Shown: piece by piece, positions 2,217-11,114 of the stretch | How the letters are laid out: the number at the start of each line of letters is the position of its first letter | Numbering within the stretch: position 1 is the stretch's first letter | Assembly: GCA_002104905.1 (NCBI GenBank) | Contig: MCFE01000055.1 | Location: 124,001 to 188,000 of the forward strand | From: Basidiobolus meristosporus CBS 931.73 | Taxonomy: Eukaryota > Fungi > Basidiobolomycota | DNA: 64,000 bases | Direction: 5' to 3' | Notes under the pieces: generated by a model | Told to the model about the DNA's origin: nothing | The model's database searches: none | Seen by the model: only the letters and a program-made list of their open reading frames with translations | Program-made: the position numbers and the translations under genes

Positions 2217-5200
2217 ATGAAGCTGGAGATTTTGGCCAAATATGATGATTTGCTTAGTGATATTTTGGTCGATTCGTTGTATCTTTGGTTTCGAACTCAT
2301 AAAATGAACCAAAATCGGCGTTCAGCTCGTGTTAAATGCGAGGACATTGTCGAAATAGTTCAGGATAGTATAGTGGCTAAAAGATCCATAGACTCGGCGG
2401 TTCAACGACTTTTAAGGTATTTTCCAAACTTTGTTGCTTCGCTTTTTGGATGGTACATTAGAGAACTGACCAAACAAATTCTAGTCTAGAATATATAGAT
2501 ATTTTTTTGAGGAGAAAAAGCGTCGCGGACACACAAGGCTTTGTTGAGTATGTCTTTAGAAACGTCGAAAATATTCCCTCCTCAATCACTAACTTCAGCA
2601 TGGATTTAATAACAGGCACTCAAAAAGATATTTTTCAATATACCACCCAGAAGCAGGGTTTGAAATAAGTCAGACTCACCGGTATAGAACTAGCAAGACC
2701 GAAGCATCAGTAGTTGCAACCAGACGTTGGGAGGTCGGAGAAGAAATTCGATGCTGTAGCGGTGGAATTGCTGAACTGACTGAAAAGGAGTTACAAAAAT
2801 TGGAAAAAAGGAAAATGGATTTTAGTGTAATGTGGTCAAGTCGAAAAAATAGCTACTGTCTCTTCTTAGGTCCTGCGCGCTTTGTAAACGTATGTATTAT
2901 CTACAAGAACCTTGAATGTTATACATCGACTCAAACCTCAAAGCAACCACTAACTTTTGAACTGTAATACTAGCATGATTGCAATTCTAATTGTGAGGTA
3001 AGTCCTGTACATATGTATTTCCTACTAGACGCGACCTTCTAATGTCTCTCAAGTTTGAGCCTTTCGGACCAGATGGGATTTGCCTAAAGGTAGTTAGACC
3101 CATCGATGTTGGCGAGGAGATTACAACATATTATGGCGGGAATTATTTTGGCGACAAAAATTGCGAGTGCCAATGCGCGACATGCGAGAGGTATGAAGTC
3201 AGGCGCGAACGTCCCCGTTACTTCTCTAATGGTGTATGTGAATTTTAGGGTGGGTGAAGGCGCGTTCAAACCAACTATTGAAAGTATTTTAGAGGAGACA
3301 GAACATGAGCATATTCGTAGAAGTTCAAGAAGACGTAGCTCAAAACATGGTTAGAACGCGGTTTATGAATCTATAGATGGGGGAAAACACGCTCACGTGT
3401 CGATTTGTTAGCTGGTTATAGCGTTCGTTCAATTAAGAAGAAAAAAGCTCAACATCGATATGATGGGCAACAGGCTTTACGTGACAAGTACGGTATTCTA
3501 TGCAAGTTGCTGACGAATAACAACGACAGCGTCCGCGATCTAAACAATATGGAATTCGCGGAATTGCCCAAGGCAATCAATCTCAGCAACATAGCAGCAA
3601 TAACGGCTGCCTCGAATTTGCTACACCATTTTATCGACAGCCTTTATGGTAGAAACGGTTCCAAGAACAGTACAAATGAAGACCCTCCAGAGACTCCCAT
3701 CCCCTCTCTCTCGGAAATCCTGGATATCGTTCGCGGATATTCTATAAACTGTGCGGTTTGTCAGTACATTTGGATTGATGATGGCCTACTTTCTGAGGAC
3801 CCGACAGTCACGTCTATGGAGCTTCGTGTTAATAATGTATGCCCACGCTGTGAGCGGCACGAAAGGATATTCGGTGTCAAATGGCCTGATAGAGCACCAA
3901 GAAAGCATGCCTCTAGCCAAGTAAGTATTCACGCAAACTGTTTTTAAATAGTGAATAACTTATTTATATTTAGGTCATGTTGGAGTGTAAAGGCGAGGTG
4001 GCTGATGAAATTCACGATGTGGTAGCAAAGGGGATCAACATTGGTATGTCAGATGCTTCGTTGTTTGGTATACTTTGAACTAATTTCCCAAGCAGGAATA
4101 CCCGACGTAACAATCAAGCGACAACCTACGACACCAGAGCCTGAAGATTCTCACAGAAAACGACTTGTGAACGAAGCTTCAACAAAGCTGAAGAAAAGAT
4201 CCAAGATATCCGGCTCATCCACACTCTCCCAATCGAATACTGCTGCTAATTCTGAGGAACAAGCCATAGTTACATCATGCGAATCAGGTAATGGTCACTT
4301 TGACATTTCCTATCAGAACAAGACTGACAATAACAAATTGAAGTCTTTCCAGATAATAGTAGTGAAGTGTCCGAAACACCAACTTGTGAATCCAGTCTCG
4401 TCACCGATATATCCGAATCGCACACTCCAAGAGATGGTGTCCCGATAGAAATGCCGCGACTCTATGAGGATATAAGCAAATTGGCATTTGGTATTAAGAA
4501 TGGCGAGTTGCTTACAAACGATGTACACCCGACTGGAGACTTTACATTTATGAAAACTTCCGGTGTTTCCGAGTCGGCTGTCTCTCCAACGACACATGTG
4601 GAAAGTGATTCTTTTGGAGTGCCGGTTCTAGATTTTAACAAAGCTGTGGCTGTGTTTGTGAATCCACTTGATGACAGTGAACCTTTCTGGTGGCCAGCTT
4701 TACTTGTTCCTACATCAGAACGCGATGACTCCATGCGCAAACCAAAGCCTGGTCAACATACTCTAAGATATTTTGAGGATGGGACTTATTCCTTGTGCTC
4801 GTCCAAAGAATTCGTCATTTTCGATCCTTCCACAAAGCCATTTACTCACTTCAAGAATCGTTTCCCGGAGTTTCTTAATCACATCGCAGTACGTCGAGCA
4901 ATAGCGTTTTTTGAGACCGGGCAGGTACTGAACGAAATCAAATGGCTACGCTGGAAGTGCAACGAAAATAAGGTAGATCACCCGTCTTACTTTACAATTT
5001 AACTAGGTTGTAACACAATAATCTCTCTACCTAGCCCTCATCACGACGAAGACATGAAGGTAAGAATGCTAGTGGTTGGCTGAAACCCTGACGAACAATA
5101 AGCTAACGAGTTGACTTAGATGTTGCCATCATAAAAACTTATATGTACAGAATCGGCGACGAGATTCAAGTCATTAGTTCTGAGCACCCAGGGAAATCCT

Positions 5201-5409
5201 GGAGAGCCATAGTGAAGGAAATTGACATTCTCCAAGATGAAACGCATAAAGGGCTCCATTATTTTGTCCATTACTCTAGAGCTAGTACGAAGTACGTTGC
5301 CACCTAATCCTAACTGCTATCACGTGTTCTAATTCGTTATTGATTTAGTCAGGATGAATGGATTTCTCCATCTCGTATTGCGCACTATTACCACCGCAAA
5401 GCCTTATAG
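2217..5409 (+). CDS. SET9: Histone H4K20 methyltransferase Set9/SUV420H with C-terminal PWWP-like and chromo-barrel (Tudor-knot) domains
   Basis: N-terminus AKYDDLLSDILVDSLYLWF. SET core FSVMWSSRKNSYCLFLGPARFVN|HDCNSNCE and GEEITTYYGGNYFGDKNCECQCATCE. CPRCERHERIFGVKWP motif. Phase-compatible GT-AG introns join ORFs 3405-3947, 4041-4448 and 4367-5002 plus three last exons ending at TAG 5409. Confidence 0.88.
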
Positions 5410-6601
5410 ACATTCCCAGAACCATTTTGTAACATTATTTTTTATTTATTTTGATGTTTCCTCAATATTGTGGCGTTTCCTTCTAGATCTCTTTAACTAT
5501 TTCCCATGAATCATTTGATATTTTGACAGGTGATCATCTGTTAGCACGAAACCTACTGTGGGTGTGGTTTATGGTTATACAATGTAACATGAGCATGTAT
5601 GCCTGTATTATCTTGAATTACTAAATATTCACCAACACATCAAGCTGATCATCTAACTCAATACCTCTTTGCTAAAGCCTCTCGTGTGGTCTGATTGACA
5701 ACCAATATGACCCAATGCTAAGTACTCCCATTTCCAACATGTATGGTGAAATGGGCGAGTGTGGGATTAGCCTGTAGTGAAGCTTTTCGCTCATTCAGAT
5801 AATTAGCAAAAGTTACTGCTCATTTGTGTAGCTACAGCTTTCTATTGTGCTTGTATCAGATTATTTCGCTCATTGATCTATAAGATATTCATGCTGATGA
5901 GTGTATCAAAGTGGGTTTAGGTTCAATCAAGATAGCGACTAACTGAGAGAGCTGAAGGAGAACCAGTGACTCGAGAGTAACATGAAATATGCTCCTCCCT
6001 GGCCAGCGAGCCATTTCGAATGTGTTTAATGGCTAGTATATATAGGTGATTATGATTCAGTGAACAATGCTAAGCTAATTGGGTTATTAAACGACTAATT
6101 GAACCCTAGTATCTTGTATTCTAGTCGGTTATATGTTTCTTATGTGTATCTTAATATATTAATCATAGTCCTTGTTGTGTAGTACATAGCACGAACAACG
6201 CATTTAATCACACGCTCCCTGTTTCGTCATGATTTAATCTATTCATCATTGATTCACCATTCGTCATGTGGTATCTAGATTGTTTGCCCGATGATCAGGT
6301 GATTTAATGCAGTGAACAGGAGTCACATTCATATTTTTTTGATGGGCTTCTGAGTTTCACTACCCTTTTTCGCAAAGTTCCATATTGAGACCCCGCACAC
6401 CTGATTCGAAAATACCTACAGTGGATATTCATCTGACCCCTTTACCATATGACCCTAATACCCCTTTCCTTATAAATCACGAATAATCAAGTAACAGAAA
6501 ATAGCAGCTCCTCATTTTATCGTTCCTCTTTATTCAACTTGTATTTTTTAATTGTACTTTGCCAGTGGTGACTCTTCCTTGGTAAACTCCATTCATACAA
6601 T

Positions 6602-7858
6602 ATGGGCTATTATACTTACTTCCTTGTGGGGGGTATGCTTATCACCGGCACCCTGAACACGCTATTAAACAAAATCCAGGATAAGCAATGTGTAGGAAAC
6701 TGTGACGATCCAGATCCCTCAAAGCATCAACTGTTTGAGCAGCCCGTGTGGCAAACGCTGAATATGTTCATTGGAGAGGCTTCGTGTCTGCTCGCTTTCT
6801 ATTTTATCCAATTATCCAACAAACGCCGCAACGCTAATCAAGGGTATGAGGAGATCCCGGACTCTAGCACACCTCGAGCACGTGAAGAAGACGTTGAAGG
6901 CGATGATAGCTCCGTTGTCAAGAAACGTCTTTCGTCAGCTCAACCCTCTACCGAACCTTTAGAAGGTTGGAAGACCCTTTTAATGTGGCTTCCCACGTTA
7001 TGCGATATATGCGGGACTACTGTAGGTCAATCAAACTTCTTTTATTGTTCGTACTAGATTTAACCATTCTGGTTCATTTTGTAGTTGATGAATGTTGGCT
7101 TGATCTATATCTCGGCTTCCATATATCAAATGCTTCGTGGTGCAGTGGTGTTATTTGCTGGTGTTTTCTCCGTTGTTTTCTTGAATCGCAAATTACACCT
7201 CTACCAGTGGTTTTCCTTGATCTTGGTCGTCCTCGGCGTTAGTATTGTTGGTGCTAGCAGTATTTTATTCCCAGATGAAGGCCCCGGGTCGCATCCAGCT
7301 GTAAATGCTTCATTCACAGGAATATTTATGGTCCTGTTTGCACAAATATTTACCGCGTCCCAATTCGTCATCGAGGAAAAGGTTCTACACAGATACCATA
7401 TTGTCCCCGTTAAAGCGGTTGGCTTAGAAGGCGTTTTTGGAATTGCTTCGTTGATTCTTGGAGTCCCGATCCTCTACTTCTTGTTTGGCAAAGGCACGAA
7501 CGGTTACTTCGATATTCCTGTGGGATGGAACCAAATTATCAACCACCCGCCCGTTTTAATCTCTGGCATATTGATTGCATTCAGTATTGCTTTCTTCAAT
7601 TGGTTCGGATTATCAGTTACACGTACGATCAGTGCGACTTCGAGATCAACAATTGATACCTGCCGTACCCTATTCATCTGGATGGCCAGTCTCTCTTTAG
7701 GATGGGAACAGTTCAGATGGCTTCAGGTCCTTGGGTTTGTCGTTTTAATTTACGGGACTTTCTTGTTCAATGGCGTCGTCTCCCCACCCTTCTGCAAAGT
7801 AGATCCTTTGGAAGCTAGTGTTCCACCTCGACCTTCAGCTACGCAAGATGAAGTCTAA
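6602..7858 (+). CDS. SLC35F6-like nucleotide-sugar/drug-metabolite transporter
   Basis: Motifs MLITGTLNTLLNKIQD, FEQPVWQTLNMFIGE, PTLCDICGTT|LMNVGL and SIYQMLRGAVVLF. One intron, 7022-7084. Multiple TM helices. Confidence 0.88.
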
Positions 7859-8269
7859 GTGACTCGTTTTTAGCTCCTCGAGCCCTTGATTTAGGATCCT
7901 TACTACCTGGATAATGTTTCCATTCATTGTAGTTCTCTCTTTGTATATTAAAACTTTTCTAAATAAAATGAAGAAATTGTGCCAAGCAGATGCGTATTTT
8001 CAAATTGTAATTGATTGTGTCGACCATACGATGCCATGATCATAGGCGAAGGCAACGAACTTGGCCATATATTTATCACCGTAGTCTTTTGTTTGTATTG
8101 CAATAAACATTCGGGATTTTACCAATCAAGTTTGACCAAGATTAGCTATTATTGAGCGAAAAAAGTGGCTAAGCAGCCAGTCCGACGTTTAATTTTTATT
8201 TACGTAACTAAAATCATAGTACTTGCTAGATAGTCACACTGCCCATTACCTTTAAATATTTACATCAGT

Positions 8270-8933
8270 ATGTTAGGCACTGGTCAAGAATCTAGCAACA
8301 CTCAATCCCGTCCAAAGATTGAAGCCACTTCCAAATTCACACTACACTCAGTCAACGAGCAAAATCTCGCGAAATTACGTAGACTCAATAGTGTTCTATT
8401 CCCTATAAAATATAGTGAGCGTTTTTATCAAGTCGTCCAGGAAGCTGGAGAGATGGCAAAGCTAGGTATGTAAAATATTATCCGCAATAAGGGCCAGGTC
8501 CAAAAAATCCAGCTAAAACCCTCTTGAACAAAAGCCTACTTCAAGGATACTTGTGTTGGCACTGTATGCTGTCGTCGAGAACACGTGTCTGACTCTCCAG
8601 AACAAACAGAGCTGTACTTGATGACGCTCGGGGTGCTGTCGCCCTATAGACGGTGCGGTTTAGGTATTCCAATGGCTTGAAAAACCAACCGAGCTTCCGG
8701 TTACGGAATTTCTCTATTATATAGGAGCGATGCTTCTTCAACACATATTCACCGAATGCGCAAAAGAAAAGAACATAGTCAAGGTGTATCTTCATACCCA
8801 GTCAGGTAATCAAGAAGCTTTGAAGTTTTACGAGAAGTTTGGGTTTATCAAATCGCATGAGATTGAACATTACTACCGACATATCCAAGATTCGAATGCA
8901 TATGTACTGTACAAAGATTTAGTCCCCAAATAA
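8270..8933 (+). CDS. NAA50: N-terminal acetyltransferase NAA50/Nat5 (GNAT)
   Basis: LNSVLFPIKYSERFY, YLMTLGVLSPYRRCGLG (acetyl-CoA motif), VYLHTQSGNQEALKFYEKFGF. Three exons. Confidence 0.88.
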
Positions 8934-9650
8934 GTTAATCGTATTATTAATAGTCCTCCAAGAAATAAATCAGCCCAAGTGCTGGTTATATACAAGATGT
9001 TCGTTTTGTAATCTGCAAACCTGGCCTGACTGGAATGGCACCATTTGTCCACCATATTGTGAAAGGGTATTTCTCCAAAAAGGTGGCATTGGCGGGTCAC
9101 CATATTGGGAAACTTACCAAAAACATCCCCACAGCTACAAACCAGATTGTGCAACCTATGTAATGAAGCATGAGAATTTGCACTGTAAATGTTAAGGGCA
9201 AAAAAAAAATCGGCCGTGAGAAAATAGGAAATTCAACTTCCTAATCAAGCACGTATGATTTGTCAAAAAGTAACTGCGTCCTTGATTGAAGCAACATTCT
9301 ACATACATCGCTGCGACTCTCACGCTGACGTATATTTATATTGGAGTACAATTGTAATCGACGCATAGTCTCTCCACAGGACTTCTTGTTTGCAATCAGT
9401 ATAGTGTAATGAAGTCATATATATTTACTGTATATATGATTTAATTTCCACGTTTATGCACTAATATTCTAAATAGGTGCCATATGGATATGATATCCCC
9501 ACCCAACCGCTACCTCTGCCCATTGGGTCGTGCCATGGAGAGGTCCAATTGTCCAGTGTACATTTAAATACTCGTGTTCGCTTTTTACCTAACCTAACCT
9601 CTCTCTATCTTCTTAATCATCGTTTCTTTGAGGCCTTCTCCCCCTGCACA

Positions 9651-11114
9651 ATGACTGTTTCAAACGAACTCCGTATTCTTGACAGTATTCTCGAGAATAT
9701 TGGTAACACTCCTCTTGTACGTATTAATAAGATTGCTGAGGCTGAGGGACTGGAATGCGAACTCTTGGCTAAATGCGAGTACTTTAATGCCGGTGGCTCA
9801 GTGAAGGATCGTATTGGTAGACGTATGGTCGAGGAGGCTGAAAAAGCTGGTATACTCAAGCCAGGCTATACAATCATTGAGCCCACTTCTGGTAATACCG
9901 GAATCGGTCTTGCTCTTGCTGGTGCTGTCAAGGGATACAGAGTTATCATCACTCTTCCAGAGAAAATGTCACAAGAAAAGGTAGATGTCCTAAAGGCTCT
10001 GGGTGCTGAGATTATTCGTACTCCAACTGAAGCAGCTTGGGATGCTCCCGAATCCCATATTGGTGTTGCCAGACGCCTCAACAAAGAAATTCCCAACAGT
10101 GTAATTTTGGATCAATACGTCAATATCAACAATCCTATGGCCCATTACGAAGGTACTGCCGAAGAAATCCTCCGTGCATGCGATGGACAAGTAGATATGA
10201 TCGTTGCTGGTGCTGGTACCGGTGGTACCATCACTGGTATTGCAAAGAAAATCAAGGAAAGATGCCCTAATGTTGAGATTGTTGGTGTGGATCCCTTTGG
10301 TTCAATTCTTGCCCTTCCCGAATCTCTGAATGAAACTGATATTACCAGCTACAAGGTTGAAGGAATTGGATACGATTTCATTCCTGATGTCCTTCAGCGT
10401 CAATATATCGACACATGGGTTAAGAGCAATGACAAAGATTCCTTTATTATGTCTAGACGTCTTATCAGGGAGGAGGGACTCTTGTGTGGCGGATCATCCG
10501 GTACTGCTATGGCTGCGGCAGTTAAGGCAGCCAAAAAACTCAAGGCAGGTCAACGTTGTGTTGTTATCTTGCCAGATTCCGTACGTAATTACATGAGCAA
10601 GTTCTTGAATGACGATTGGATGAAAGAGAATGGCTTCTCCGACTCCGTCAGCCAAAAGGAAGAACAACAGCAAACTCAAAAGTGGGGTGGTGCTACCATC
10701 AAAGACCTTAACCTTCCTGCAGCAATTACCGTGCAGCCCAAAACGTCTTGCCGTGAAGCGTTGAGTATAATGGAGAAAAACAGCTTCGATCAACTCCCAG
10801 TAGTTTCCGAAACTCACAGAGTCATTGGTTTGGTAACTATGGGCAATATCTTGTCGAAAGTTAGCTCTGGAAAGATCACCGGTGATACTCCAGTTAATCA
10901 AGTGATGTTCAAGTTCACTACTGTTGGAAAGGACTTCTTTGAGATTTCAGTTAACACTCCATTGGCAGACATGTCCCGTTTCTTTGAAACCAACTCATCG
11001 GCGATTGTCACAGAGCGTGCGGTCAATGTTGAAAAGGTATCTACTGCCGAGCTGAAGGTGCTTCATGTGGTCACCAAGGTGGATTTGTTATCTTGGTTAA
11101 TGAAGCAATTGTAA
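9651..11114 (+). CDS. CYS4: Cystathionine beta-synthase with C-terminal CBS domains
   Basis: IGNTPLVRINK, AKCEYFNAGGSVKDRIG (PLP lysine), IIEPTSGNTGIGLAL, EGIGYDFIP, then a C-terminal Bateman pair. Likely start is MTVSNE at 9651. Confidence 0.95.
   Translation: MTVSNELRILDSILENIGNTPLVRINKIAEAEGLECELLAKCEYFNAGGSVKDRIGRRMVEEAEKAGILKPGYTIIEPTSGNTGIGLALAGAVKGYRVIITLPEKMSQEKVDVLKALGAEIIRTPTEAAWDAPESHIGVARRLNKEIPNSVILDQYVNINNPMAHYEGTAEEILRACDGQVDMIVAGAGTGGTITGIAKKIKERCPNVEIVGVDPFGSILALPESLNETDITSYKVEGIGYDFIPDVLQRQYIDTWVKSNDKDSFIMSRRLIREEGLLCGGSSGTAMAAAVKAAKKLKAGQRCVVILPDSVRNYMSKFLNDDWMKENGFSDSVSQKEEQQQTQKWGGATIKDLNLPAAITVQPKTSCREALSIMEKNSFDQLPVVSETHRVIGLVTMGNILSKVSSGKITGDTPVNQVMFKFTTVGKDFFEISVNTPLADMSRFFETNSSAIVTERAVNVEKVSTAELKVLHVVTKVDLLSWLMKQL

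What the first reader, a model, noticed from the sequence alone, without database searches (positions are those of the whole stretch)
2217..5409. Set9 H4K20 methyltransferase fused to two methyl-lysine reader domains (PWWP-like and chromo-barrel)
Seen: exon phases join without a frame break from the SET domain into VFVNPLDDSEPFWWPALLV...LRYFEDGTYS (PWWP-like, FWWP variant). They continue into YRIGDEIQV...WRAIVKEID...YFVHYSRASTNQDEWISPSRI (Tudor-knot/chromo-barrel, like Esa1/MOF/Eaf3). Established: in S. pombe, Set9 needs a separate PWWP protein, Pdp1, which binds H4K20me; Dikarya Set9 and animal SUV420H SET proteins are not, to my knowledge, PWWP-fused. Inference: this is a Rosetta-stone writer-reader-reader fusion that could self-propagate H4K20 methylation in an early-diverging fungus.
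Basis: partly seen in the sequence, partly recalled or inferred. Interest (0 to 1): 0.72.

Follow-up and report, generated by a model that had tools for sequence, protein, structure and literature searches.

The report
Set9 methyltransferase with built-in reader domains
This fungal (Basidiobolus-type) gene encodes a histone H4K20 methyltransferase of the Set9/KMT5 class joined in one protein to a PWWP domain and a chromo-barrel domain, a layout shared by many early-diverging fungi, missing from moulds and yeasts, and apparently undescribed in the literature.

Summary
Positions 2217-5409 (+) form a 13-exon gene with 12 GT-AG introns of 52-84 nt, giving 815 codons plus the stop and no frame break.

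- **Enzyme half:** it matches KMT5B/SUV420H (E 9e-17).
- **PWWP exon:** it folds confidently as a PWWP domain (pLDDT 94). Every structural match is a PWWP, with ARID4A nominally first.
- **Last two exons:** they form a chromo-barrel. The family profile hits the ARID4A/RBBP1 chromobarrel at E 2.9e-10.

The fusion is not peculiar to this genome. A B. ranarum paralogue is deposited as one 850-aa "Set9" with the same exon layout and the same C-terminus. Set9 proteins of Kickxellales, Conidiobolus, Mortierellomycota, chytrids, Fonticula and the holozoan Pigoraptor carry the same PWWP, many with the chromo-barrel. Those of Mucorales, Glomeromycotina and Ascomycota carry only SET.

The interpretation needs trimming.
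It is not demonstrably Pdp1-like.
- In Basidiobolus the chromo-barrel has lost two of the four cage residues needed for H4K20me3 binding in RBBP1.
- The first cage position of the PWWP is non-canonical.

Both domains are under purifying selection. Methyl-lysine reading and self-propagation remain inference.

No RNA reads could be laid. The scan has also noted a second such gene on another piece of this genome.

The parts
2217..2547 (+). Exons 1-2: KMT5/Set9 N-terminal helical domain, including the 'THKMN' motif
   Evidence: phmmer against the PDB hits KMT5B residues 15-58 at E 0.0038. It is 79% identical to B. ranarum Set9. Exon 2 matches the orthologue from 2483 onward.
2616..3190 (+). Exons 3-5: SET domain and post-SET cysteine cluster. 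The 24-nt micro-exon 2974-2997 encodes HDCNSNCE; the post-SET cluster lies at about 3159-3188.
   Evidence: Exon 3 hits KMT5B/SUV420H1 at E 8.9e-17. Exon 5 hits SUV420H2 at E 1.4e-9, with the CxC...C cluster aligned. NHDC and EEITTYYG are read directly from the sequence.
3249..3920 (+). Exons 6-7: Set9 C-terminal region with a CxxC ... CPRCERH cysteine motif at 3750-3860
   Evidence: The motif pattern occurs in 88 of 116 Set9 homologues, Ascomycota included. Exon 7 matches B. ranarum Set9 at E 1.9e-40.
3921..3973 (+). If retained, the frame stops at 3945-3947.
   Evidence: GTAAGT...TTTAG, 53 nt, 23% GC. The read-through peptide ends after 8 further residues.
3974..4642 (+). Exons 8, 9 and the first part of exon 10: a poorly conserved, basic and Ser-rich linker
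   Evidence: No family match. Only 54% identical to the B. ranarum orthologue fragment, with pN/pS 0.45. The frame stays open through canonical introns I8 and I9.
4643..4972 (+). PWWP domain (FWWP variant), closest to the ARID4/RBB1NT type
   Evidence: Pfam PWWP scores 22.3 bits (gathering score 25.6) and RBB1NT E 0.017. The AF2 model has pLDDT 94.1. The Foldseek top hits are ARID4A 7v8n and 2yrv. The VIA top hit is 7v8n at Z 9.7, and every listed match is a PWWP. The family profile hits DNMT3B, Pdp1 and ARID4A PWWPs. pN/pS is 0.14.
5035..5059 (+). Exon 11, a 25-nt micro-exon (PSSRRRHE)
   Evidence: The same peptide joins the PWWP to the chromo-barrel in B. ranarum P0152, P0158 and P0003.
5120..5409 (+). 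Exons 12-13: chromo-barrel (Tudor-knot type) with a degenerate aromatic cage, then the stop codon TAG at 5407-5409. Intron 12 is 5292-5348.
   Evidence: Alignments A2 and A3. The family profile hits the RBBP1 chromobarrel 6bph at E 2.9e-10, then MRG15, Eaf3 and MOF. Orthologue P0158 scores 20.8 bits on Tudor-knot, equal to the gathering score. Its AF2 model (pLDDT 83) matches Esa1, TIP60, MSL3, MRG15 and RBBP1. Cage columns are counted. pN/pS is 0.19 for exon 12 and 0.05 for exon 13.

Best explanation
Positions 2217-5409 are a single gene for an 815-residue Set9/KMT5-class histone H4K20 methyltransferase. Its C-terminal half carries two Royal-family domains, a PWWP and a chromo-barrel, both of the kind found in ARID4/RBBP1 proteins.

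The enzyme half has the N-domain, SET, post-SET cysteines and the fungal CPRCERH motif. It looks catalytically intact.

The most likely working is that the PWWP tethers the enzyme to nucleosomes in cis, through DNA and possibly a methylated histone tail. That is the job the separate PWWP protein Pdp1 does in trans for S. pombe Set9. Tethering keeps the enzyme on chromatin and favours further methylation of neighbouring H4K20.

In Basidiobolus the chromo-barrel has lost two of four cage residues. It probably acts as an accessory chromatin, nucleic-acid or protein contact and not as a methyl-lysine reader. In Kickxellales, Conidiobolus and Mortierellomycota the cage is complete, so there it may read H4K20me as reported for RBBP1 and MSL3.

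Shown here: the gene structure, the domain identities, conservation of the architecture, and purifying selection. Inferred: the H4K20 specificity, what the readers bind, and any feedback.
For: - **Gene model:**
- **KMT5 identity:**
- **PWWP fold:**
- **Chromo-barrel:**
- **Same architecture elsewhere:** about 35 of the top 150 cluster representatives found with the PWWP exon also carry a Set9-type SET domain.
- **Who they are:** B. ranarum Set9 (850 aa, same C-terminus), Conidiobolus, Dipsacomyces, Coemansia, Mortierellomycota, five chytrid genera, Fonticula, and Pigoraptor from the EukProt collection.
- **Survey of 108 Set9 homologues:** the Kickxellales entries, apart from a few partial models, have SET+PWWP+chromo-barrel, most chytrid entries have SET+PWWP, and Mucorales, Glomeromycotina and Ascomycota have SET only.
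- **Shared exon layout:** the B. ranarum paralogue locus has the same layout.
- **Orthologous contig:** it is collinear with the window at 4570-10290.
- **Purifying selection on both reader domains:** pN/pS 0.14 and 0.05-0.19, with synonymous sites saturated.
- **True ARID4-like proteins:** proteins with Tudor, RBB1NT/PWWP, ARID and Tudor-knot domains are in the same PWWP hit list.
Against: - No transcript evidence exists for this genome.
- NCBI models for B. meristosporus and Conidiobolus coronatus split the locus into a SET gene and a PWWP gene.
- The window's PWWP exon scores below Pfam's gathering score (22.3 against 25.6).
- Exon 12 alone gives no Pfam or PDB sequence hit.
- The chromo-barrel fold was modelled on the orthologue (66-89% identical), not on the window's joined exons.
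- Cage residues are incomplete in both readers.
- The reported RBBP1 chromobarrel-H4K20me3 binding is millimolar, and ITC did not reproduce it (10.1101/257527).
Confidence: 0.75

Rival explanations
1. There are two adjacent genes. A Set9 gene ends by read-through into intron 7 (stop at 3945-3947). A separate PWWP/chromo-barrel gene starts at the ATG at 3977.
For: Retaining intron 7 gives a stop after 8 residues, and an in-frame ATG lies at 3977. NCBI models for B. meristosporus and C. coronatus are split in this way. The linker exons 8 and 9 have no homology support of their own.
Against: Only about 30 nt would separate the stop from the next start. Introns 7-9 have strong canonical sites, and intron 7 is 23% GC. 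The B. ranarum paralogue is annotated as one 850-aa protein with isoforms. Other gene calls for Conidiobolus give a fused 910-aa protein. The Pigoraptor protein from EukProt carries SET and PWWP in one chain. About 35 independent cluster representatives are fused.
Confidence: 0.07
2. The fusion is real, but neither C-terminal domain reads methyl-lysine in this species. They would serve as DNA, nucleosome or protein-interaction modules, as reported for other cage-less Royal domains such as the ARID4 hybrid Tudor domain, which binds DNA (PMC9077328).
For: The RBBP1 cage equivalents W615 and Y619 are Ala and Gln in the window and in the Basidiobolus sequences that reach those columns, but aromatic in all the other sequences that reach them. 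The canonical first PWWP cage position is never aromatic in this subfamily. RBBP1 chromobarrel binding to H4K20me3 is very weak and disputed (10.1101/257527, PMC9077328).
Against: Two PWWP cage positions are conserved: Trp in 38 of 39 sequences and Tyr/Phe in 38 of 39. The Asp that follows is kept in 29 of 39, and an aromatic sits one residue away from the canonical first position in 30 of 39. Both domains are under purifying selection.
Confidence: 0.35
3. This is the first reader's full model: a self-propagating write-read loop. The fused readers bind the H4K20me product of the enzyme and recruit or stimulate it on neighbouring nucleosomes.
For: Writer and candidate readers are in one chain. 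S. pombe Set9 needs the H4K20me-binding PWWP protein Pdp1 (as cited in PMC10553808). The nearest solved chromo-barrel, RBBP1, was reported to prefer H4K20me3, and MSL3 was solved with H4K20me1 (10.1101/257527).
Against: No binding data exist. The cages are degenerate in this species. The PWWP is no closer to Pdp1 than to H3K36me-reading PWWPs.
Confidence: 0.2

Closest known systems
Basidiobolus ranarum 'histone lysine methyltransferase Set9' KAK9764467.1 (P0152, 850 aa) and the fragment K7432_012523 (P0158)
   Same: Same domain order, same exon layout, same first and last residues. P0152 is 53-91% identical exon by exon (linker exons 8-9 unmatched), and the P0158 contig is collinear with the window.
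   Different: P0152 is a paralogue on another locus. The true orthologue in that assembly is cut off by a contig end inside exon 10. The database entries name the enzyme only, and no description of the reader domains was found.
S. pombe Set9 with Pdp1
   Same: A Set9/KMT5 enzyme that depends on a PWWP domain (PMC10553808, citing Wang et al. 2009). The fungal CxxC...CPRCERH motif is shared with ascomycete Set9 proteins.
   Different: In S. pombe the PWWP sits on a separate protein, whereas here it is in the same chain. The Pdp1 PWWP (2L89) matches the family profile at only 22.5 bits, no better than DNMT3B or ARID4A. Pdp1 has no chromo-barrel, to my knowledge.
Human KMT5B/KMT5C (SUV420H1/2)
   Same: N-domain, SET and post-SET regions align.
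   Different: To my knowledge the animal enzymes carry no PWWP or chromo-barrel. Their C-terminal parts are unrelated.
ARID4A/RBBP1 and ARID4B
   Same: Both reader domains find their best, or nominally best, solved match in ARID4A. These are PWWP/RBB1NT (7v8n, 2yrv) and the chromobarrel (6bph, 2lcc). The order, PWWP then chromo-barrel, is the same. ARID4-like proteins of Chromosphaera and Salpingoeca appear in the same PWWP search.
   Different: There is no ARID domain between them, no hybrid Tudor domain and no R2 region, and a SET enzyme sits in front. In this species two RBBP1 cage residues are replaced.
Other writer-reader fusions (SUV39/Clr4 chromodomain-SET, NSD PWWP-SET)
   Same: The general logic is shared: a lysine methyltransferase carrying Royal-family domains in the same chain (established knowledge).

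Membership tests
KMT5 / Set9 / SUV420H H4K20 methyltransferases | SET domain specifically similar to KMT5B/C | tested here: met
   Exon 3 against the PDB: KMT5B at E 8.9e-17, and only KMT5B/C chains listed. Exon 5: SUV420H2 at E 1.4e-9.
KMT5 / Set9 / SUV420H H4K20 methyltransferases | N-terminal helical domain preceding SET | tested here: met
   Exon 1 aligns to KMT5B residues 15-58, including THKMN, at E 0.0038. It is 79% identical to annotated B. ranarum Set9.
KMT5 / Set9 / SUV420H H4K20 methyltransferases | Cofactor and catalytic motifs (NHDC, conserved Tyr) and the post-SET Cys cluster present | tested here: met
   ARFVN|HDCNSNCE, EEITTYYG and NCECQCATCE are read directly. The post-SET cluster aligns to SUV420H2.
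KMT5 / Set9 / SUV420H H4K20 methyltransferases | Methylates H4K20 | not testable with these tools
   This needs an enzyme assay.
PWWP domain (PF00855) | Pfam model at or above its gathering score | tested here: inconclusive
   The window exon scores 22.3 bits against 25.6, E 1.9e-4. Paralogue P0152 scores 26.7 bits. Subfamily members P0005 and P0009 score about 35 bits.
PWWP domain (PF00855) | Five-stranded barrel followed by helices, matching solved PWWP structures | tested here: met
   The AF2 model has pLDDT 94.1 and pTM 0.87. All top Foldseek and VIA matches are PWWP domains, up to Z 9.7.
PWWP domain (PF00855) | Three-residue aromatic cage | tested here: inconclusive
   The second Trp of the WWP motif and the beta-3 Tyr are conserved (38 of 39 for Trp; 32 Tyr plus 6 Phe). 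The canonical first position, two residues before the WW, is Pro here and never aromatic in the family. Phe or Tyr sits one residue later in 30 of 39 sequences. Cage geometry could not be inspected.
Chromo-barrel / Tudor-knot (PF11717) | Pfam model at or above its gathering score | tested here: inconclusive
   Exon 12 alone gives no hit. The joined exons were not submitted. Orthologue P0158 scores 20.8 bits, equal to the gathering score. Paralogue tail P0152:760-850 gives no hit. Kickxellales Set9 proteins score 30-33 bits.
Chromo-barrel / Tudor-knot (PF11717) | Chromo-barrel fold | tested here: met
   Tested on the orthologue, not on the window. The AF2 model of P0158:84-165 has pLDDT 83. All Foldseek top hits are chromo-barrels with probability 1.00. 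The family profile hits RBBP1 at E 2.9e-10.
Chromo-barrel / Tudor-knot (PF11717) | Methyl-lysine cage (RBBP1 Y592, Y612, W615, Y619) | tested here: not met
   The equivalents of Y592 and Y612 are kept as Trp and Tyr. Those of W615 and Y619 are Ala and Gln in the window and in the Basidiobolus sequences that reach those columns. Cage residues are taken from 10.1101/257527.
ARID4 (RBBP1) family | ARID domain between PWWP and chromo-barrel, and an N-terminal hybrid Tudor domain | tested here: not met
No exon gives an ARID or Tudor hit. The true ARID4-like hits do carry these domains.
Pdp1-type PWWP (S. pombe) | Closer to Pdp1 than to other PWWP subfamilies | tested here: inconclusive
   Profile scores are 22.5 bits for 2L89, 26.9 for DNMT3B and 21.7 for ARID4A. 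2L89 is not among the top structural matches. The backbone of the domain tree is unresolved.

The most novel reading that the evidence does not exclude
The ancestral fungal, and perhaps opisthokont, H4K20 methyltransferase was a writer-reader fusion carrying an ARID4-type PWWP and chromo-barrel. Mucoromycotina, Glomeromycotina and Dikarya later lost or split off the readers, so the trans partnership of Set9 with Pdp1 in fission yeast would be what remains of the old single chain. Species with intact cages (Kickxellales, Conidiobolus, Mortierellomycota) would then offer a natural one-protein system to test whether H4K20 methylation can spread by reading its own product.
Probability: 0.3. Interest if true: 0.7.

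Novelty: new variant of a known kind. Interest (0 to 1): 0.5.

Why it matters
H4K20 methylation is tied to DNA repair, replication and heterochromatin. How KMT5 enzymes are targeted is poorly understood outside fission yeast and animals.

Here the enzyme and two candidate chromatin-binding domains sit in one chain across several early-diverging fungal lineages, Fonticula and a holozoan. That gives three things.
- Independent genomic support for a functional link between KMT5 and PWWP, as in Set9-Pdp1.
- An unexpected link between KMT5 and the ARID4-type PWWP and chromo-barrel pair.
- A set of natural variants, some with complete cages and some with degenerate ones, on which read-write coupling could be tested directly.

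It also flags split gene models in B. meristosporus and C. coronatus that probably need merging.

Tried and rejected
- **Genome-contig scan with the PWWP exon:** it found nothing, because that collection holds only bacteria and archaea. This says nothing about the gene.
- **Exon 12 alone:** no hit against Pfam or PDB sequences. The domain is split by intron 12.
- I did not submit the joined 815-aa protein to any search or fold tool. The chromo-barrel was assessed through the orthologue P0158 and family alignments.
- **Exon 2 acceptor:** my first choice of 2512 was replaced by 2485 after aligning P0152.
- **PWWP tree:** the backbone is unresolved. A single origin of the fusion is neither shown nor excluded, and the tree does not place Pdp1.
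- **Literature searches:** no paper was found that describes a Set9/KMT5 fused to PWWP or a chromo-barrel. The main text of Grau-Bove et al. only dates KMT5B/C to Opisthokonta.
- **Word search with P0152:** it did not return the window's own protein, so no stored full-length sequence of this gene was available.
- **Pseudogene or assembly artefact:** rejected. The frame is open, the orthologous contig is collinear and pN/pS is low.
Full report
**1. The observation**

The region is eukaryotic and rich in introns. Three-frame translation and the raw sequence let me build a 13-exon model on the + strand:
- 2217-2416, 2485-2547, 2616-2889, 2974-2997, 3054-3190, 3249-3349, 3412-3920
- 3974-4043, 4096-4287, 4353-4972, 5035-5059, 5120-5291, 5349-5409

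A script that walks the exons codon by codon found no in-frame stop. It counted 2448 nt, which is 815 codons plus TAG at 5407-5409. It also found twelve GT..AG introns of 52-84 nt, with GC of 0.23-0.45 against an exon mean of 0.43.

If intron 7 were retained, the frame would stop at 3945-3947, and an ATG follows at 3977. That is the only formal route to two genes, and it would leave about 30 nt between them.

**2. The enzyme half**

- Exon 3 matches only KMT5B/KMT5C chains in the PDB (E 8.9e-17).
- Exon 5 matches SUV420H2, including the post-SET cysteines (E 1.4e-9).
- Exon 1 matches the KMT5B N-domain around THKMN (E 0.0038).
- The NHDC motif lies on a 24-nt micro-exon at 2974-2997.
- Exon 7 carries a CxxC...CPRCERH motif. 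I found its pattern in 88 of 116 Set9 homologues, ascomycetes included.

**3. The PWWP**

Pfam gives PWWP at 22.3 bits for exon 10, below the gathering score of 25.6, and RBB1NT at E 0.017. The language-model search places the exon among PWWP clusters.

A full search of 1.84 billion cluster representatives with exon 10 returned 188 proteins. An alignment of 39 of them (A1) gave an AlphaFold model of the window's own exon with pLDDT 94.1 and pTM 0.87. The model has five strands followed by helices.

- Foldseek ranks the ARID4A PWWP-ARID structure (7v8n) and the RBB1NT structure (2yrv) first, then NSD3 and DNMT3B PWWPs.
- VIA-align also ranks 7v8n first at Z 9.7, but within one Z unit of several other PWWPs.
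- The family profile hits DNMT3B at 3.5e-5, Pdp1 2L89 at 7.7e-4 and ARID4A at 1.3e-3.

The fold is therefore certain. The ARID4 affinity is the best reading but not decisive. A special closeness to Pdp1 is not seen.

**4. The chromo-barrel**

Intron 12 splits this domain.
- Exon 12 alone finds nothing.
- Exons 12 and 13 align cleanly to the tails of the orthologues (A2 and A3).
- The family profile hits the RBBP1/ARID4A chromobarrel at E 2.9e-10, followed by MRG15, MRG2, Eaf3, MOF, MSL3 and Esa1.
- The closest orthologue, P0158, is 66% identical to exon 12 and 89% identical to exon 13. It scores 20.8 bits on Tudor-knot, exactly the gathering score.
- Its model (pLDDT 83) matches only chromo-barrels and knotted Tudor domains, at Foldseek probability 1.00.

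**5. Is it one gene?**

Among the top 150 representatives found with the PWWP exon, about 35 also match the window's Set9 exons N-terminal of the PWWP. Source names include:
- B. ranarum "histone lysine methyltransferase Set9", KAK9764467.1, 850 aa (P0152)
- Dipsacomyces, Coemansia and Linderina
- Conidiobolus coronatus
- Dissophora, Linnemannia and Actinomortierella
- Podochytrium, Siphonaria, Spizellomyces, Phlyctochytrium and Synchytrium
- Fonticula alba
- Pigoraptor chileana, from the EukProt collection

P0152 starts and ends as the window's model does, and it aligns to the window exon by exon. Its locus L002 has the same exon layout.

B. ranarum contig L001 is collinear with window 4570-10290. 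The shared order is the Set9 tail, an EamA-type transporter, an acetyltransferase and cystathionine beta-synthase. L001 begins inside exon 10, which is why its protein P0158 is a fragment. The window therefore comes from a Basidiobolus relative of B. ranarum.

Against a single gene, NCBI models for B. meristosporus and C. coronatus split the locus. Other gene calls for Conidiobolus give a fused 910-aa protein.

**6. Distribution**

I took 108 Set9 homologues from the word search with P0152 and scanned them locally with the PWWP and chromo-barrel profiles.
- The Kickxellales entries carry SET, PWWP and chromo-barrel, apart from a few partial models.
- Most chytrid entries carry SET and PWWP.
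- Mucorales, Umbelopsis, Endogone, Gigaspora, Dispira and all Ascomycota carry SET only.

Mortierellomycota and Fonticula also have the chromo-barrel. PMC9676040 states that SET9 homologues of Aspergillus and its outgroups have only a SET domain.

The same PWWP search also returned true ARID4-like proteins, with Tudor, RBB1NT/PWWP, ARID and Tudor-knot domains, from Chromosphaera and Salpingoeca. It returned stand-alone PWWP proteins from Glomus, Ambispora, Syncephalis, Coemansia and Actinomortierella as well.

A tree of the domain resolves the lineage clades but not the backbone. One ancient fusion is compatible with the data but not proven.

**7. Can the readers read?**

The RBBP1 chromobarrel cage is Y583, Y592, Y612, W615 and Y619, and the last four matter for H4K20me3 binding. 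That binding is millimolar and was not reproduced by ITC (10.1101/257527; see also PMC9077328).

In alignment A3 the equivalents of Y592 and Y612 are kept in the window, as Trp and Tyr. The W615 column reads W10, Y5, A4, and the Y619 column reads Y8, F6, Q3. The Ala and Gln belong to the Basidiobolus sequences, the window included.

In the PWWP:
- The second Trp of the motif is present in 38 of 39 sequences.
- The beta-3 aromatic is Tyr in 32 and Phe in 6.
- The following Asp is present in 29 of 39.
- The canonical first aromatic position is never aromatic. Phe or Tyr sits one residue later in 30 of 39.

Against the B. ranarum orthologue, synonymous sites are saturated (pS 0.81-1.09) while pN is 0.12 for the PWWP and 0.15 and 0.06 for the two chromo-barrel exons. 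That gives pN/pS of 0.14, 0.19 and 0.05. The neighbouring transporter and CBS genes give 0.11 and 0.07. Both domains are maintained by selection, whatever they bind.

**8. Reading**

The gene is a real, conserved KMT5/Set9 enzyme with a fused PWWP and chromo-barrel of ARID4 type. I take the PWWP to be a cis-acting chromatin tether, doing what Pdp1 does in trans in S. pombe (PMC10553808, citing Wang et al. 2009). I take the Basidiobolus chromo-barrel to be an accessory contact that has probably lost methyl-lysine reading.

A self-propagating H4K20me loop is possible. It is better tested in lineages with intact cages.

**9. Novelty**

The proteins are in public databases and several are named Set9. 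I found no paper that describes this architecture.

The scan's notebook lists a second such gene on another piece of this genome (s1-239839). That fits the two paralogues seen in B. ranarum.

Noticed in passing
window 3750-3860: A CxxC ... CPRCERH cysteine motif lies in the Set9 C-terminal region. The pattern is present in 88 of 116 Set9 homologues from chytrids to Ascomycota. No Pfam family covers it. It may be an undescribed zinc-binding element of fungal Set9.
   Followed up: partly
This fits the two paralogous loci, L001 and L002, in B. ranarum.
   Followed up: no
L002:6001-9478 (B. ranarum JASJQH010000423.1): The B. ranarum paralogue is deposited with three products. 'Variant 2' (793 aa) reads into the intron after the 25-nt micro-exon and so lacks the chromo-barrel. 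'Variant 3' (639 aa) starts inside the SET domain. Isoforms with and without readers may exist.
   Followed up: no
window 4570-10290 against L001:80-7572: This stretch is collinear with a B. ranarum contig. The Set9 reader half is 66-75% identical at the protein level, while the neighbouring transporter and cystathionine beta-synthase are 88-91% identical.
   Followed up: partly
window 5410-6600: In both B. ranarum loci a glutaredoxin gene follows Set9. In the window only two short, weak collinear matches remain, at 5796-5852 and 6041-6103. The gene may be diverged or lost here.
   Followed up: no
window 6602-7858 and 9477-11114: The downstream genes are an EamA/nucleotide-sugar-transporter-like membrane protein and a cystathionine beta-synthase-like (PALP) protein, judged from the ORFs and the Pfam marks on the collinear B. 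ranarum genes.
   Followed up: no
public models ORX88475/ORX88476/ORY02632 (B. meristosporus) and KXN67577/KXN67578 (C. coronatus): These NCBI gene models split the Set9-PWWP-chromo-barrel locus into two or more partial proteins, whereas other calls on the same DNA give one 910-aa protein. They are probably annotation errors.
   Followed up: partly
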